Origin: Lytechinus pictus
Lineage: Eukaryota
NCBI RefSeq assembly: GCF_037042905.1
Contig: NC_087246.1
Coordinates: 31,248,001 to 31,312,000 of the forward strand
DNA: 64,000 nt
Direction of reading: 5' to 3'
Part shown: one piece after another, positions 57,048 to 63,963 of the stretch
How positions within the stretch are numbered: the first letter of the stretch is position 1
How the letters are laid out: every line of letters starts with the position of its first letter
Notes under the pieces: model-generated
The model's input: the letters and a program-made list of their open reading frames with translations, nothing else
What the model was told of the DNA's origin: nothing
Database searches by the model: none
Position numbers and translations under genes: made by a program

Positions 57048-58278
57048 ATGGCGTTAGTTTGTTCAAGTAAGCAAGTATTTCATTCAATTATTTCACCGTC
57101 ATCATGCCAATTCCGTAGATTTTTTCGAGGATTCTTTTGGATTGATTTATTAGATTTGTATGATAATAATGATGTTATACGGTTTGCTTTGAATGGGAAA
57201 TTGTAGGGAATGCGATGTTTCGGATTCTTGTGGCGTAGTTTTGATTTCGGTCCCATCAATGCTTTTCAGCGTATGGTCGTGTTGATGTTTAGGCGCCAAT
57301 GCAGTTTCGCACCGGCCGACTTCGTCTTCGAGATAATTTCCCCACCAGTAATTGTTCGAAAATATCATAGCAGCCAGGTCTCTCAATCACATTTCAACTT
57401 CAAGATCAATACATCCAGCGCTTTTCCGGTTGGGCGCTAGTGTAGTTTCGCACCTCCCCATTTAATGGTTTTCAAACATGTACAAAACTACAATCTCACC
57501 CTAAATTATAAATAATTCACAACCTAAAAATTTGCATCTGAGCCTCCAAAGTCCAGTAGAAGTTGAATATTTGCCGTTTTGACACTTTTTTACAAAGTTT
57601 TACACCTATTTCGGAATCACTCGGTCGCTTGATCAAGCTCAGCGCTGCACATAAGCAGTCGGTACGCGTACAGTACGTACCACCTAGTGAAGTGTGTGTG
57701 TGTATTTGAGTTTTGTCAGACGTGTATCAATCAGATATGATTATTTACGTCTGGGACCGACCTTTAACGTCACCATCCGAAAGACGTGACCAGGGCTCGA
57801 ACCTCTGCATCAAATTGTAACTTCCCCGCATAGCTTGGATTACAGGCGCACGCCACAACTTCTTCTTCTTCTTCTTATGTTTGTTTGAGTGGCGATTAGT
57901 CATATTTGACTATTGTCGCCATTGACATTATTAATAAAAAATCTCACTTCTCACATAATAATATTATTACCAATATGATGTATACATATATAAAATATTT
58001 TTTTTGTATCCTTCTGATATGAAAGAGGATAATTATGATATGTACAAAAGTTTGCAGTAACTCTTGTCAAAATGGCATATAAACAAAACTTCACCAAAAA
58101 CAAACCGCTATCTTCAGCTCAGTTCCAACTAGTTGCGCTTGCCCTGCCCTTTCAAAGATGCAATCATACCGGTCAGCACGGTACATTGTGCCGATTTTTC
58201 GGACATAAATGCCTAGGTCACCCATGCATAGACGAGGGGGCGCTAGTGTACCTGTGCTTACAGATGGGTTAAACATTA

Positions 58279-58310
<32 letters not shown>

Positions 58311-61300
58311 CAACACCAACAACAACAAGGCGAAAACACTTGTGGGCTTTGTTAGTTATATGTGCAGAACATATCATTTTGTATATATTATATCATACAT
58401 TATTATGTATATATATATATATATTCTTCTTTTCACATTAGACTTGTACAAGCATATCCATTCATATTTCTTATAGACAATACAATATTAAAATAGTACA
58501 TCACTCCTTACTAAAACGTTTCGTTCTTGAAACGAAACGTAAAAATGCTTTCTGTATCCCTGGGTCATCTTTTTTTAAATACTCCATTATTTGTCCTGGC
58601 TGTGATTCATTCAATTCTACAAGGAGCATTGATCTTTCAATTATATATTTTGGACAATGTAAAAGATAATGTCTGACAGTTTCTAGCTCAGGACATCTAT
58701 CACAAAACCCTGTTGGATGGATCCCTAATCTTAGTAGATCTTGGTTAAGACCAGCGACTCCAAAACGGAGACGATGGAGTACAGTTTCCTGTCTTCCTAG
58801 ATTACATTTATATGTGGATAGCACTGATGGTTGCAATTCTTTCAGTGCTGAGTTAGTTTTATTCCATCTTTCTTGCCAAATTATCTTACAACTTTTTGAA
58901 ATAAGTTGCATAATTTCTGATAATGTTATTTGATTATGAATTTCTATTTTGTTTGATAAAGCTTTTTTTGCGCAGGAGTCTGCTATTTCATTTCCTTTTA
59001 TTCCACAGTGACCAGGGATCCACTCCAGGTATACCTCTATACCTTTATATTTGAGTCTTGTACTAATAGTTAGAATTTCTGTAATGATAGGATCGTCTTT
59101 CCGATTCTGTAAAGATAAAAGTGCACTTAATGAATCACTGAAAATAACAACACCTGTATATATATCTAAATATTCTATCCATTCCAGTGCGAGAACAATC
59201 GCAATTAATTCAGCCCTATAGGAGGACGTGAAATTCGATAGTCTTTTGCCTTGGTAACAGGAAAAATAAGGTACATAAAAAGCAGCTGAGCAACGCCCAG
59301 TTGTGCAAGAAGAGCGAGTTTTTCTATGGTATCTTCAAAAAGATTTTTTCCCCTCTTTCAGCTTGCACCAAGTATTACGGTAGTGGTTGTGCAGAGTGGT
59401 TGATGTTTGTTGTGTGAAGGTATGTGTGTGGGGTGTGCGTGTGTGTGATTTTTTGAATGAAATGTGAAAAATGTGAATACACGTAGATTTAGCGATGAAA
59501 TAAGAAATAATAATGTAGAGCCTTGTTTTGAACTCTAGGTCAGCTCAGAGAACTTTCCTTCAGTTTACACTCTGCACAACCACTACCGTAATACTTGGTG
59601 CAAGCTGAAAGAGGGGGAAAAAATCTTTTTGAAGATACCATAGAAAAACTCGCTTTGGATTGATGGATTACTGTACAAACTCACTCAATGTGGTATAGGA
59701 GGAAATATGTTACATTTTTTAGAAAATTATCTAACAGAACGTACCTTTCAGGTAAGAGTTACAAATACTGAATCCAGAACATTCCAAGTCCATAGCGGAC
59801 TCCCCCAGGGGAGTGTTCTGAGTCCCCTTTTATATAATGTCATGATGAGAGATATTCCAATTGATCCTGAAGTGACAATATCCATATATGCTGATGATTG
59901 TGCAGTATGGTTTTCTGGAAAAAATGTAGAGAATATTAGATTAAGGATACAAACTTATCTAGATGTATTATGTACCTGGCTTAAAGACTAGGGCTTCAAT
60001 TTTTCTATTGAGAAGACTGTTCCGGTATTTTTCACTAAGCTCACAAACGTTACTCCTCCAACAGTCAAGTTTGAAGGGAGTATACTCACTTATAAAAATA
60101 ATCACCGTTTCCTAGGAATGATATTTGATAGTAAATTGTCTTGGCATCCCCATATAGAGAACGTAGTTTCAAGAAGTAAAAGGAAATTAAATATATTGCG
60201 AAGTTTAACAGGAACTAAATGGGGGAGTTCATCTAAGTCCTTACTTATGGTTTACAGGGCAATTATTAGATCAATTTTTGATTATGGTTGTCAAGCTTAT
60301 GATAGTGCTCCAGTATCTACAAAAAAATTGTTAGACTCGGTGCAATATCAAGCACTCAGAATATGTGCTGGTGGGCTGCCATTAACATCGCTAGTTTCAC
60401 TGCAGGTGGAAATGGGAGAACCCCCTTTAGATTTAAGAAGGCAAATGTTATCAAGCAAGTATAGACAAAATATAGAAAGACATAATAATCACCCATTAAT
60501 AACACGTATCAAACCATGCTGGCAGTTCGATTATCTTAAAGGTAAGAATGTTAGTAAACCGTTTGGTTATAGGCTCCAATCCAAGATAGGAAAAGAAATT
60601 AGTATCGAAAATATTATTTCTCCATCCTTTCCCCCTTGGTTATTTTGTCCACCAGTTGTATCTACTGAATTGAGTTCACAAATCAAGAAATCGGATCATC
60701 CAATACAATTACAACAATTGAGTTTGGAATTGATACATACAAAATGGTCACACCAACTCCATATATACACTGATGGATCCAAAGCCCCTGAAAAGGGGAT
60801 TAGCTCAGCTGCTTTTTATGTACCTTATTTTTCCTTCTACCAAGGCAAAAGACTATCGAATTTCACCTCCTCCTATAGGGCGGAATTAATTGCGATTGTT
60901 CTTGCACTGGAATGGATAGAAGATTTAGATATATATACAGGTGTTGTTATTTTCAGTGATTCATTAAGTGCACTTTTATCTTTACAGAATCGGAAAGACG
61001 ATCCTATTATCACAGAAATTCTAACTATTAGTACAAGACTCAAATATAAAGGTATAGAGATATACCTGGAGTGGATCCCTGGTCACTGTGGAATAAAAGG
61101 AAATGAAATAGCAGACTCCTGCGCAAAAAAAGCTTTATCAAATAAAATAGAAATTCATAATCAAATAACATTATCAGAAATTAAGCAACTTATTTCAAAA
61201 AGTTGTAAGATAATTTGGCAAGAAAGATGGAATAAAACTAACTCAGCACTGAAAGAACTGCAACCATCAGTGCTATCCACATATAAATGTAATCTAGGGA

Positions 61301-61782
61301 GACAGGAAACTGTACTCCATCGTCTCCGTTTTGGAGTCGCTGGTCTTAACCAAGATCTACTAATATTAGGGATCCATCCAACAGGGTTTTGTGATAGATG
61401 TCCTGAGGTAGAAACTGTCAGACATTATCTTTTACATTGTCCAAAATATATAATTGAAAGATCAATGCTCCTTGTAGAATTGAATGAATCACAGCCAGGA
61501 CAAATAATGGAGTATTTAAAAAAAGATGACCCAGGGATACAGAAAGCATTTTTACGTTTCGTTTCAAGAACGAAACGTTTTAGTAAGGAGTGATATGTGC
61601 TATTATTATATTGTATTGTTTATAAGAAATATGAAAGGATATGCTTGTACAAGTCTAATGTGAAAAGAATATATATATATATATACATAATAATGTATGA
61701 TATAATATATACAAAATGATATGTTCTGCACATATAACTAACAAAGCCCACAAGTGTTTTCGCCTTGTTGTTGTTGGTGTTG

Positions 61783-61814
<32 letters not shown>

Positions 61815-63963
61815 TAATGTTTAACCCATCTGTAAGCACAGGTACACTAGCGCCCCCTCGTCTATGCATGGGTGACCTAGGCATTTTTATGTCCGAAAAA
61901 TCGGCACAATGTACCGTGCTGACCGGTATGATTGCATCTTAGAAAGGGCAGGGCAAGCGCAACTAGTTGGAACTGGGCTGAAGATAGCGGTTTGTTTTTG
62001 GTGAAGATTTGTTTACATGCCATTTTGACAAGAGTTAAGACAAACTTTTGTAGACCGGTATACTATATTCATCGTTTTTATAATAGAAGGATGCACAAGA
62101 AAAATATTTCATATATGTATACATCATATTGGTAATAATATGAGAAGTGAGATTTTATAGATAAAGTCAATGGCGACAATAGTCAAATATGACTAATTGC
62201 CACTCAAACCAACATAAGAAGAAGAAGAAGCTCTTCTTGCACTTCACTAGGTGGTACGTACTGTACGCGTACCGACTGCTTATGTGCAGCGCTGAGCTTC
62301 AAGCGACCGAGTGATTCCGAAATAGGTGTAAAACTTTGTAAAAAAAAGTGTCAAAACGGCAAATATTCAACTTCTACTGGACTTTGGAGGCTCAGATGCA
62401 AGTATTTTAGGTTGTGAATTATTTAGGGTGAGATTGTACATGTTTGAAAACCATTAAACGGGGAGGTGCGAAACTACACTAGCGCCTCCGGTTGTACTGT
62501 AGAGTAAAGTGCCCAAATATATAAATTTTGATATCTAAGACTAAGACTAAGTAAAGACTAAATCTATAAATGTAATTATTTACTTACCAAACGTAGCCAG
62601 GCGGCTTCTTGAGAGTAAAAATCATTTACTAACGTAGGTTCTCTCAATGAAGCCAGGGAGTCCTTCCTATTCATCTGCGTGTACCGCAAAAAAACCTGAA
62701 AATGACCCCGAGATTTCTACTTTCCTTCTAAAACATCTAGCCATAAATCATGTACATGGGATAAAACTTCATTTCCGACATTTCTACGCTCTCGTTGTTA
62801 TTTTTAAACAAGAATTCATCAAAAAAATGAAAAATATTGTGAAAAGACGGAAGAGACTTGCCCGATGTTTACGCCGCCATCTTGTTTCTTATTGTACTTC
62901 CCCAACGTTACGGACGCGAGCGTCGCGTAACGTTGGGAAAGTATAAAGGATAAAAAAATTCTATGGATTCACATAGCCTTTGACATGACAGGACTGCTGA
63001 TATTTCACAACCACACACAGAAACTTCAACTATTCAAGTTTCAACAATAAAAAATCTGACATTTATCAAAAAGCAAACCCTGAAATGATCTGAGAATGTG
63101 GCCAAACATGGAAAGAGCTTTCAAAATTTTCAAATTATCAACAGATCTGAGCTCATTTTGAGCGGATTTTGTTGCATTTCGGAGATAAAGGTTGAAATTG
63201 AGTCGGATTTGAGCTAAGTTTACAATGTTGATTTTTCTGTACAAAACTAGTAACCTAAGTTATTGTATATTTTGACGATGCTACAATTCGTTAAGTGAAA
63301 GTAAGGCATTGCTTGGACTGATAAATCTGTTTCGGAGGAGGTTTTTCAACATTTTTTTTTTTTTTTTTGCCCTCGTACACGGAGGATGACGGCCATTGGG
63401 CTCGTAGGGGTGGAGCTCCACCGACGTCTTAACTACAGCGTCTATGGAGAAAAGGGTGCAATTTTGCACCCTCCTCGATTACTCCTAAATTTTGCTTTTT
63501 GACGGGGGAGGGGGAAGAAAGAAATGATGAAGATAAATTTATATTAAATAAAATCAGCTTACCAAGGTGGTAAGCAGAGCATATCCCTGACAGAAATAGA
63601 CTAGATTTATCGGTCTAGGCATTGCCTTGCAATTATATCCTACAGAAAGCCTTTCTGAAGTCTTCGCTTCACCTTCGTTCCAAGCAAACATCCTTCTACA
63701 TTTTAATAGAATTTTCTTTTTCTTTTTTAGAGTGTATCCTAATTTCCTAAAAATGCCCCATTAATTTCACACTGTATCCAAATTTCCTTCTTTTTTTGTT
63801 TGATCTCTTTAAGTCTCTAATGAGGTACCTGAGGTTCCTGTCGTATCACCAGCATCAGGTCGAGTCTTTGAGAAGAGACTAATTGAGAAGTTCATCTCTG
63901 AGAATGGCACTGATCCTGTCAATGGAGAACCTCTTTCTGAAGATCAGCTGATTGAGGTCAAAG
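57048..63963 (+). CDS. PRPF19: Pre-mRNA-processing factor 19, U-box exons; gene continues beyond window
   Basis: Exon 57048-57066 plus exon 63814-63963: [56 protein letters not shown], matching human MSLICSISNEVPEHPCVSP... Confidence 0.95.
57695..59302 (-). mobile_element. SINE with 7SL(Alu-domain)-like head, split into 59302-59291 and 57859-57695 by a LINE
   Basis: Rejoined across a CAAC duplication: AACTGGGCGTTGTGGCGTGCGCCTGTAATCCAAGCTATGCGGGGA...GGTTCGAGCCC...TCTTTCGGATGGTGACGTTAAA...ACTCAAATA(CA)n; GTG duplicated at its own insertion site. Confidence 0.8.
57860..59290 (-). mobile_element. 5'-truncated I-group (Nimb/Ingi-like) LINE copy: RNase H part, CCHC finger, 3' UTR, (AAG)n tail
   Basis: Reverse complement of 60804-62230 with scattered substitutions; ORF 58501-58911. 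Confidence 0.9.
59655..62230 (+). mobile_element. 5'-truncated I-group (Nimb/Ingi-like) LINE with RT, RNase H and CCHC zinc knuckle
   Basis: Frame 59656-61593 with one nonsense codon (TAG 59989-59991): [57 protein letters not shown]; 3' stem-loop and (AAG)5 tail. Confidence 0.92.
62593..62900 (+). repeat. Uninterrupted copy of repeat X in PRPF19 intron 1
   Basis: Colinear with the fragmented copy at 27677-33040; contains CGCCGCCATCTTG. Confidence 0.7.

What the first reader, a model, noticed from the sequence alone, without database searches (positions are those of the whole stretch)
57695..59302. Candidate 7SL-derived (Alu-like) SINE in an invertebrate deuterostome, hidden by a LINE insertion
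Removing the LINE (CAAC duplicated) rejoins a ~173-nt element on the minus strand. Its head ACTGGGCGTTGTGGCGTGCGCCTGTAATCCAAGCTA matches the human 7SL 5' end, as I recall it (GCCGGGCGCGGTGGCGCGTGCCTGTAGTCCCAGCTA), at 28/36 by manual alignment. It keeps the GGGCG/CGCCT helix, the UGUNR SRP9/14-binding motif and the GGC/GCT loop complementarity. A tRNA-type B box (GGTTCGAGCCC) follows, then a TTTCGGATG.GACGTTAAA segment reminiscent of V-SINE-type central domains, a LINE-like 3' hairpin and a (CA)n tail. To my knowledge 7SL-derived SINEs are described from Euarchontoglires and hagfish, so this could be a further independent origin of the SRP-hijacking strategy.
Basis: partly seen in the sequence, partly recalled or inferred. 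Interest (0 to 1): 0.9.

Follow-up and report, generated by a model that had tools for sequence, protein, structure and literature searches.

The report
7SL-headed SINE in an echinoderm-like genome
This is a young short retroposon, present in more than 1,000 copies, whose first 47 bases were copied from the host's own signal-recognition-particle (7SL) RNA, the trick that made human Alu; it appears to be the first such case in an invertebrate and keeps only the minimal SRP9/14-binding piece.

Summary
On the minus strand, a 167-nt SINE plus a (CA)n tail is split after nt 11 by a 1,431-bp, 5'-truncated LINE. That LINE has an RNase H domain and an (AAG)n tail, and GTTG is duplicated at the junctions.

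- **Copy number:** intact copies elsewhere in the 812-Mb genome carry the uninterrupted sequence. The SINE-type head motif occurs 1,077 times and the tail motif 1,277 times (reversed-pattern controls 0). The best 40 copies are 99-100% identical.
- **Mobility:** some copies have 5-13-bp target-site duplications, and one paralogous empty site was found.
- **Head origin:** the genome has seven full-length 7SL genes. SINE nt 1-47 begin at 7SL position 1 and match it at 40-42 of 47 bases, including 29-30 of the first 30 and the lineage-specific bases. Rfam Metazoa_SRP aligns nt 1-47 to model positions 1-44 (E about 1e-6). No tRNA is detected.
- **Rest of the element:** nt 48-167 show no 7SL similarity beyond chance. 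They hold a perfect B box, a body of unknown origin and a hairpin tail.

Known 7SL SINEs keep both 7SL ends. This one keeps only the 5' Alu domain, which matches the 46-nt minimal domain defined experimentally in 2025.

Not established: the partner LINE, Pol III transcription and SRP9/14 binding. No published invertebrate case was found, and Repbase and Dfam could not be searched. At least eight first-reader notes elsewhere in this genome flag the same family; none was followed up.

The parts
59291..59301 (-). SINE nt 1-11 (ACTGGGCGTTG): the 5' end of the 7SL-derived head, cut off from the rest by the LINE insertion
   Evidence: Intact copies read (A)CTGGGCGTTGTGGCG.... This equals host 7SL positions 1-11 except for C3 to T.
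57860..59290 (-). 5'-truncated non-LTR retrotransposon (LINE) inserted into the SINE head: RNase H and C-terminal ORF remnant (59289-58501), 3' UTR with an internal A-run, and an (AAG)n tail
   Evidence: The 262-aa frame is open. Pfam RNase_H E 2.2e-10. The 3' 661 nt recur as one unit at 90-97% at 34 other places (full-length or nearly so), out of 242 candidates.
59291..59294 (-). GTTG, upstream copy of the 4-bp target-site duplication made by the LINE
   Evidence: Intact SINE copies have GTTG only once.
57856..57859 (-). GTTG, downstream copy of the LINE's target-site duplication (SINE nt 8-11)
57820..57855 (-). SINE nt 12-47: the rest of the 7SL-derived 5' Alu domain (helix 3 with its UGGC loop, the UGUAAU U-turn, helix 4, and the closing strand of helix 2); also the putative A box
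   Evidence: Exact 26-mer at 57831-57856. Rfam Metazoa_SRP model positions 1-44 align on intact copies at 29.6 and 32.5 bits.
57754..57819 (-). SINE nt 48-113: the non-7SL part, holding a perfect B box GGTTCGAGCCC (57803-57793), a GTCAC/GTGAC hairpin and the TTTCGGATGGTGACGTTAAAGG body segment of unknown origin
   Evidence: No similarity to 7SL beyond chance (p 0.57-0.94). No tRNA call.
57703..57753 (-). SINE nt 114-164: 3' tail with a 7-bp stem (CAGACGT 57753-57747 / ACGTCTG 57723-57717), then ACAAAACTCAAATA; the presumed recognition site for the partner LINE's reverse transcriptase
   Evidence: the stem appears in both the minimum-energy and centroid folds. The 34-mer tail motif occurs 1,277 times.
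57692..57702 (-). (CA)n microsatellite tail of the SINE
   Evidence: All copies end in (CA)n of variable length, 3-29 nt.

Best explanation
The element is a copy of a young, dispersed, chimeric SINE family. The window copy was later broken by a LINE insertion.

**Shown.**
- The first 47 nt are a copy of the 5' end of the host's own 7SL RNA, starting at its first transcribed base. This segment is helices 2, 3 and 4 plus the UGUAAU U-turn, that is, the 5' Alu domain.
- The remaining 120 nt are unrelated to 7SL. They contain a consensus B box, a body segment of unknown origin, a 7-bp stem-loop and a (CA)n tail.

**Inferred: origin.** The family arose when a reverse transcriptase copying an older B-box-bearing SINE RNA switched template to a 7SL RNA and ran to its 5' end.

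**Inferred: how it works.**
- RNA polymerase III transcribes the element from the 7SL-derived A box and the acquired B box.
- The folded 47-nt head binds SRP9/14 and takes the RNA to ribosomes, where it meets nascent reverse transcriptase of a partner LINE.
- That enzyme recognises the 3' stem-loop and (CA)n tail and inserts a copy by target-primed reverse transcription. This leaves variable 5-13-bp duplications, often starting with CA microhomology.
For: **Multi-copy and young.**
- 45 scored hits out of 1,379 candidates, 99-100% identical.
- 1,077 head motifs and 1,277 tail motifs, against 0 controls.
- Median 1.9% divergence in a tail-selected sample.
- Only 12 genuine 7SL-type heads in the genome, so it is the chimera that expanded, not 7SL pseudogenes.

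**Mobility.**
- Different flanks at each locus; clear duplications at L010, L011, L012, L030, L038 and L069.
- A filled arm and an empty arm of one foldback repeat.
- 5'-truncated copies exist.

**7SL origin of the head.**
- Seven full-length 7SL genes score 272-283 bits.
- The head starts at 7SL nt 1 and is 40-42/47 identical. Alignment score is 60-65 against null 14 +/- 2.5, maximum 27.
- Rfam SRP hits cover model positions 1-44, with helices 2-4 paired. A further 18 SINE loci score 32-35 bits.
- The helix-2 pair is U3:A in the SINE and in the C12 7SL paralog, but C3:G in the other six paralogs. Pairing is therefore kept through a double change.

**Not tRNA.** No hit.

**Mechanistic precedent.** A 46-nt 5' Alu domain is necessary and sufficient for SRP9/14 association and supports about 86% of Alu retrotransposition (PMC12199147). 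The hagfish 7SL SINE is moved by a non-L1 LINE (PMC7245038).
Against: - Pol III transcription, SRP9/14 binding and the partner LINE are all unproven.
- No LINE sharing the tail was found among 30 tail loci or by negated-flank patterns.
- No tRNA-headed parent family was found, so the template-switch origin is inference only.
- The helix-4 loop is the most variable part among subfamilies. One of the two loop-loop tertiary pairs used in the mammalian SRP Alu domain may not be kept.
- Folding energies of the head and of the whole RNA are no better than shuffles.
- Many copies show no obvious target-site duplication.
- The 7SL part is shorter than the 60-nt overlap SINEBase asks for, although it formally passes at 47 identities over a 60-nt stretch.
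Confidence: 0.85

Rival explanations
1. It is the same chimeric SINE, but the 7SL piece serves only as a pol III promoter donor (A box), a defined 5' end and a stabilising hairpin. SRP9/14 and ribosome targeting play no part; mobilisation depends entirely on the LINE-type 3' stem-loop and (CA)n tail.
For: The SINE has a stringent-type 3' tail (hairpin plus microsatellite), which by itself suffices for many tRNA-SINEs. The helix-4 loop varies between subfamilies. The head's folding energy is unremarkable.
Against: The retained segment ends exactly at the closing strand of helix 2, so it is the complete 5' Alu domain rather than just the A box. Helices 2 and 3 and the U-turn are invariant across every subfamily, including copies about 13% diverged. 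Helix 2 keeps pairing through a double change. That same 46-nt unit is the SRP9/14-binding, retrotransposition-promoting unit in Alu (PMC12199147).
Confidence: 0.3
2. It is a tRNA-derived SINE (SINE2) whose head only resembles 7SL by chance or by convergence.
For: A perfect tRNA-type B box lies at nt 64-74. All sea urchin SINEs described so far are tRNA-derived (PMC3747384, PMC4824008).
Against: ARAGORN finds no tRNA. No Rfam tRNA hit even at E up to 10. 29-30 of the first 30 nt are identical to the host 7SL, with the same start position. No shuffle reaches half the observed score.
Confidence: 0.02
3. It is not a retroposon. The copies are 7SL pseudogene fragments, or a satellite or segmentally duplicated unit spread by DNA-level duplication.
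For: Tandem head-to-tail arrays exist (six units in L013, dimers in L039 and L065). Several copies share flanks because they sit in a foldback repeat.
Against: Most of the 60-plus inspected copies have unrelated flanks, a precise common 5' end, variable-length (CA)n tails, target-site duplications, 5' truncations and an empty paralogous site. Copies lie on all large contigs.
Confidence: 0.03

Closest known systems
Alu, B1 and other SINE1 families of Euarchontoglires
   Same: The head is copied from the 7SL RNA 5' end, starting at position 1. Helices 2-4 and the UGUAAU U-turn of the Alu 5' domain are kept. The A box lies in the 7SL part, and there is a B box about 50 nt downstream.
   Different: Alu and B1 also keep the 7SL 3' end after a central deletion of about 183 nt. 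They have no foreign body, end in poly(A), and are moved by L1. Here only nt 1-47 are 7SL, the B box is not detectably 7SL-derived, and the tail is a stem-loop plus (CA)n. The origin is independent, because the head carries host-lineage 7SL bases.
SINE1-1_EBu of the hagfish (Kojima 2020, PMC7245038)
   Same: An independent, young 7SL-headed chimeric SINE of similar copy number (2,363 there). It combines a 7SL head with a non-7SL body and a microsatellite tail, is moved by a non-L1 LINE, and was proposed to arise by chimera formation with an older SINE.
   Different: The hagfish element keeps 96 nt of the 7SL 5' end plus about 44 nt of the 3' end, that is, a full Alu domain. Its RTE partner is identified. 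Here only the 5' domain is kept and the partner is unknown.
Urop dimeric SINE of the shrew mole (PMC13023118) and the Tu types of tree shrews
   Same: Further lineages of 7SL-derived SINEs. The Tu types also combine 7SL and tRNA-related modules.
   Different: Those are mammalian, L1-mobilised, built from whole 7SL-deletion monomers, and either dimeric or composed of separate monomers. Here 7SL-derived and B-box-bearing parts are fused within one 167-nt monomer.
SA46/AY46 minimal 5' Alu domain constructs (Moldovan et al. 2025, PMC12199147)
   Same: The 7SL-derived part of this SINE covers the same structural unit (Rfam SRP model positions 1-44, 47 nt here). In the human work, that unit alone binds SRP9/14 and promotes retrotransposition.
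   Different: Those are engineered human constructs driven by a pol II promoter and mobilised by L1 through poly(A). This is a natural element in a distant animal with a different tail.
Sea urchin tRNA-derived SINEs (SURF1/SINE2-4c_SP, SINE2-1/2/3/6/8_SP; PMC3747384, PMC4824008)
   Same: Likely the same host group. Same general layout of B box, body and CR1/L2-style stem-loop plus short-repeat tail.
   Different: Those heads are tRNA-derived. Sequence comparison was not possible, because no reference sequences were available in these tools.

Membership tests
SINE (general, SINEBase definition, PMC3531059) | Short (<1 kb) interspersed repeat with at least 100 copies | tested here: met
   167 nt plus (CA)n. 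1,077 head motifs and 1,277 tail motifs spread over all large contigs.
SINE (general, SINEBase definition, PMC3531059) | At least 60% identity to tRNA, 5S or 7SL RNA over an overlap of at least 60 nt | tested here: met
   47 identities over a 60-nt stretch (63-64 alignment columns) against host 7SL. The real homology stops at nt 47, so the criterion is met only formally.
SINE (general) | Retroposition hallmarks: target-site duplications, variable 3' repeat tail, 5' truncations, empty sites | tested here: met
   Duplications of 5-13 bp at a subset of loci, (CA)n of 3-29 nt, truncated copies and one paralogous empty site. Many copies lack a clear duplication.
SINE (general) | Transcription by RNA polymerase III from internal A and B boxes | not testable with these tools
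   The motifs are present (GGCGTTGTGG at nt 5-14; GGTTCGAGCCC at nt 64-74).
SINE (general) | 3' tail shared with a partner LINE | tested here: inconclusive
   No LINE with this tail was found in 30 tail loci or in negated-flank pattern searches.
SINE1 (7SL-derived SINEs) | Head derived from the 5' end of 7SL RNA | tested here: met
SINE1 (7SL-derived SINEs) | The 3'-terminal 7SL segment is retained after a central deletion of about 183 nt, giving a complete Alu domain; this holds for all described families (PMC13023118, PMC7245038) | tested here: not met
   Nt 48-167 against 7SL nt 47 to the end score 13-15, against null 15 +/- 2 (p 0.57-0.94).
SINE1 (7SL-derived SINEs) | Alu 5' domain fold (helices 2, 3 and 4; U-turn) | tested here: met
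   The Rfam covariance model aligns all three helices. The minimum-energy fold of the isolated head gives helices 3 and 4. Helix 2 is kept as U:A in place of C:G.
SINE1 (7SL-derived SINEs) | Binding of SRP9/14 | not testable with these tools
   This needs a binding assay.
SINE2 (tRNA-derived SINEs) | tRNA-related head (cloverleaf, or significant similarity to a tRNA) | tested here: not met
   ARAGORN finds none. No Rfam tRNA hit at E up to 10. Only the B box is tRNA-like.

The most novel reading that the evidence does not exclude
This would be the first 7SL-derived SINE lineage in an invertebrate and the fourth independent origin overall. It would also be the first natural SINE to keep only the roughly 46-nt 5' Alu domain. 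That would mean SRP9/14-mediated ribosome targeting has been hijacked outside vertebrates, that it works with a stringent, non-L1 LINE partner, and that the minimal domain defined in HeLa cells in 2025 is enough in nature to drive a family of more than 1,000 copies.
Probability: 0.45. Interest if true: 0.85.

Novelty: new variant of a known kind. Interest (0 to 1): 0.75.

Why it matters
7SL-derived SINEs include the most successful mobile element in humans, yet independent origins are extremely rare. A February 2026 paper lists only supraprimates, hagfish and one shrew mole, and calls each new lineage very unexpected.

An echinoderm-type lineage would extend the phenomenon to invertebrates. 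It would also be a natural experiment on which part of 7SL matters. All known families keep both 7SL ends, whereas this one keeps exactly the 5' domain that deletion mapping in human cells found necessary and sufficient for SRP9/14 binding and efficient retrotransposition.

The family also shows how a 7SL head that lacks a usable B box can become an autonomous pol III unit by fusing with a foreign B box. Because the copies are 99-100% identical, the family may still be active. It could therefore be tested experimentally in a laboratory model animal.

Tried and rejected
- **Rfam on the broken window copy:** no SRP hit. The hit appears only on intact copies.
- **Extending the 7SL homology:** I looked for similarity beyond nt 47, to the 7SL B-box region or its 3' end. 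By eye it looked suggestive, but it is not above shuffles, so I rejected it.
- **Folding energies:** z-scores for the head and for the whole RNA are not significant and were not used as evidence.
- **Partner LINE:** the 30 tail-motif loci were all SINE copies or 5'-truncated SINEs. A pattern with negated upstream bases returned mostly 1-nt-deletion SINE variants.
- **Parent family with a different head:** two negated-junction patterns returned 6 and 8 hits, all truncated or internally deleted copies. An nhmmer scan of 300 kb with the body found only this family.
- **Expression:** The RNA-labelled runs are contigs only, so they prove nothing.
- **Species identity:** it is coded in the tools. 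Only run labels ('sea urchin metagenome', 'echinoderm metagenome', small shares of words) hint at an echinoid.
- **Literature:** a search by sequence motif was useless. Nisson et al. 1988 (SURF1) is not held.
- **Body classification (V, Deu, Nin-DC or Meta domain):** not testable, because no reference sequences were available.
Full report
**What is in the window**

Read on the minus strand, the sequence runs as follows:
- ACTGGGCGTTG at 59301-59291;
- 1,431 bp of unrelated sequence at 59290-57860;
- GTTGTGGCGTGCGCCTGTAATCCAAGCTA... from 57859 down to a (CA)n run ending at 57692.

GTTG stands on both sides of the insert.

The insert has an open 262-codon frame with an RNase H domain (Pfam PF00075, E 2.2e-10). 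Next come a cysteine/histidine-rich C-terminus, a 3' UTR and an (AAG)n tail. Its last 661 nt, including an internal A-run, recur as one contiguous unit at 90-97% identity at 34 other places (full-length or nearly so), from 242 first-look candidates. It is therefore a single 5'-truncated non-LTR retrotransposon that made a 4-bp target duplication.

**The rejoined element is a real repeat family**

- A search of the whole 812-Mb assembly with the 3' part gave 45 scored hits out of 1,379 candidates, almost all 99-100% identical.
- In 30 fetched loci the copies carry the uninterrupted junction CTGGGC|GTTGTGGCG. They start at (A)CTGGGCG, end in (CA)n of variable length, and mostly have unrelated flanks.
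- Whole-genome pattern counts give 1,077 matches to a 26-nt SINE-specific head motif (up to 1 mismatch) and 1,277 to a 34-nt tail motif (up to 2 mismatches). The reversed controls give none.
- A tail-selected sample of 26 full-length copies is a median 1.9% from the family consensus. Older copies at 84-87% identity also exist.
- Subfamilies differ mainly in the helix-4 loop and in a 7-nt duplication next to the B box.

**Evidence of mobility**

- Clear target-site duplications of 7-13 bp occur at L010, L011, L012, L030, L038 and L069. Shorter ones often begin with CA, while many copies have none that I could see.
- 5'-truncated copies exist.
- The window copy and three others (L008, L009, L016) sit at the same point of a foldback repeat. 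The other arm of that repeat is empty, reading ...CTTCTTGCACTTCACTAGG... across the insertion point.

**Origin of the head**

The genome holds seven full-length 7SL genes, scoring 272-283 bits against Rfam Metazoa_SRP. They begin ACCGGGCGTTGTGGCGTGCGCCTGTAATCCAGCTAC....

- The SINE begins at the same first base. It is identical to the host 7SL at 29-30 of the first 30 positions and at 40-42 of 47 overall. This includes GTTGTGGCGTGCGCC, where the metazoan consensus reads differently (alignment).
- Local alignment of nt 1-46 against the host 7SL scores 60-65. For 500 dinucleotide shuffles the score is 14 +/- 2.5, with a maximum of 27.
- On intact copies, Rfam Metazoa_SRP aligns nt 1-47 to model positions 1-44 with helices 2, 3 and 4 paired and the UGUAAU turn in place: 29.6 bits at E 3e-6, and 32.5 bits at E 4e-7.
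- ARAGORN finds no tRNA, and no Rfam tRNA hit appears at E up to 10. The stated refutation test, that the head matches a tRNA better than the host 7SL, therefore fails to refute.
- Only 12 places in the genome carry the genuine 7SL-type head, so it is the chimera that multiplied, not 7SL pseudogenes.

One detail supports a structural constraint. Six 7SL paralogs close helix 2 with ACC...GGU, whereas the C12 paralog and every SINE subfamily have ACU...AGU. That is a C:G to U:A double change that keeps the pair. The helix-4 loop of the older B subfamily equals that of the C1 paralog. For that reason I cannot name a single donor gene.

**Where the 7SL part ends**

Nt 48-167 compared with 7SL nt 47 to the end score 13-15, against a null of 15 +/- 2 (p 0.57-0.94). 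A by-eye resemblance between the B-box region and the 7SL B-box region is therefore not supported.

The junction falls right after the closing strand of helix 2. What was captured is the complete 5' Alu domain and nothing more. Downstream come:
- a perfect B box (GGTTCGAGCCC, nt 64-74);
- a small GTCAC/GTGAC hairpin;
- the TTTCGGATGGTGACGTTAAAGG segment, whose relation to known SINE core domains I could not test;
- a 7-bp stem (CAGACGT/ACGTCTG), which appears in both the minimum-energy and centroid folds;
- ACAAAACTCAAATA and then (CA)n.

**How it most likely works**

The composition above is shown. The following steps are inferred.
- **Origin.** A reverse transcriptase copying an older B-box SINE RNA switched template to a 7SL RNA and ran to its 5' end. 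This would explain why the SINE starts at 7SL position 1. The same mode was proposed for the hagfish SINE (PMC7245038). No parent family was found.
- **Transcription.** Pol III would use the 7SL-derived A box plus the acquired B box. The host 7SL has no B-box-like sequence at the matching place, which gives a reason for the fusion.
- **Mobilisation.** The stem-loop and (CA)n tail point to a stringent-type LINE partner, by analogy with CR1/L2-type SINE-LINE pairs. That partner was not identified.
- **Role of the head.** In Alu, a 46-nt 5' domain is necessary and sufficient for SRP9/14 association and gives about 86% of full retrotransposition (PMC12199147). The piece retained here is the same structural unit. 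It is invariant in helices 2 and 3 and in the U-turn across all subfamilies. I put the SRP9/14-ribosome model at roughly even odds. Against it stands a promoter-only role. Also against it: the helix-4 loop varies, and folding energies are unremarkable.

**Comparison with what is known**

The literature held here lists 7SL-derived SINEs only in supraprimates, hagfish and a shrew mole. It notes that all of them arose after a central deletion of about 183 nt that keeps both 7SL ends (PMC7245038; PMC13023118, February 2026). Searches combining 7SL and SINE with sea urchin, echinoderm or SINE1 found no invertebrate case. The sea urchin SINEs described so far are all filed as tRNA-derived (PMC3747384, PMC4824008).

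This family meets the defining SINE1 feature of a 7SL-derived head. It does not meet the shared feature of a retained 3' 7SL segment. I therefore rate it a new variant of a known kind.

Two caveats apply:
- Repbase and Dfam could not be searched. A family this abundant may already have a consensus there under a SINE2 label. SINEBase's 60-nt overlap rule (PMC3531059) would make a 47-nt 7SL head easy to overlook.
- The species is coded in the tools. Run labels suggest an echinoid, and a second coded organism holds the same SINE.

**Not done**

At least eight first-reader notes on other windows of this genome describe the same family, and none had been followed up.

Noticed in passing
L031:877-1043 and 1290-1456; L035:1294-1460; L036:1315-1460 (genome C10:7.911-7.921 Mb): Old (80-87% identical) full-length copies of the same SINE lie about 40 nt upstream of each of three tandem 7SL genes. 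Comparison with the C1 paralog's upstream sequence shows they are inserted into the conserved 7SL upstream region. The SINE-plus-7SL unit was then tandemly duplicated.
   Followed up: partly
L013:974-1984 (genome C18:3952132-3953140); also dimers in L039 and L065: Six head-to-tail SINE units are joined through very short CA runs: a SINE-derived tandem array or nascent satellite.
   Followed up: no
window 57400-57691 and 59302-59600; L008, L009, L016: The window SINE sits in a foldback (inverted-repeat) element, with one arm filled and the other empty. At least four copies of this foldback carry a near-consensus SINE at the same site, while their flanks are only about 90% alike. This suggests an insertion hot spot or gene conversion.
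   Followed up: partly
window 61574-62230 (+): A second copy (92% identical) of the 3' 661 nt of the RNase H-bearing, (AAG)n-tailed LINE lies about 2.3 kb from the first, in the opposite orientation.
   Followed up: no
L059, L060, L061, L066 (tail-motif loci on C1): Four of 30 tail-sampled copies are 5'-truncated at the same point (GTCTTTCGG, nt ~82) with unrelated upstream flanks. This could be a preferred reverse-transcription stop inside the GTCAC/GTGAC hairpin, or an alternative start.
   Followed up: no
L031:1801-1840, L035, L036, and the reverse strand of L032 and L034: Directly after the T-run terminator of the 7SL genes on C1 and C10 lies a conserved tRNA T-arm-like sequence (CCTGGTTCGAGTCCAGG). 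It is part of the 7SL duplication unit, and its nature is unknown.
   Followed up: no
L038:1501-1567 (-) (genome C8:21072019-21072085): A B-type SINE copy lacks the extra A in CCAAGCT, so its head reads CCAGCTAC exactly as in the 7SL genes. This is either an ancestral state or a secondary deletion.
   Followed up: no
runs X35-X38: A second coded organism ('organism B') holds 75-83% of the SINE's sampled 31-mers, so a near-identical family exists under another species label.
   Followed up: no
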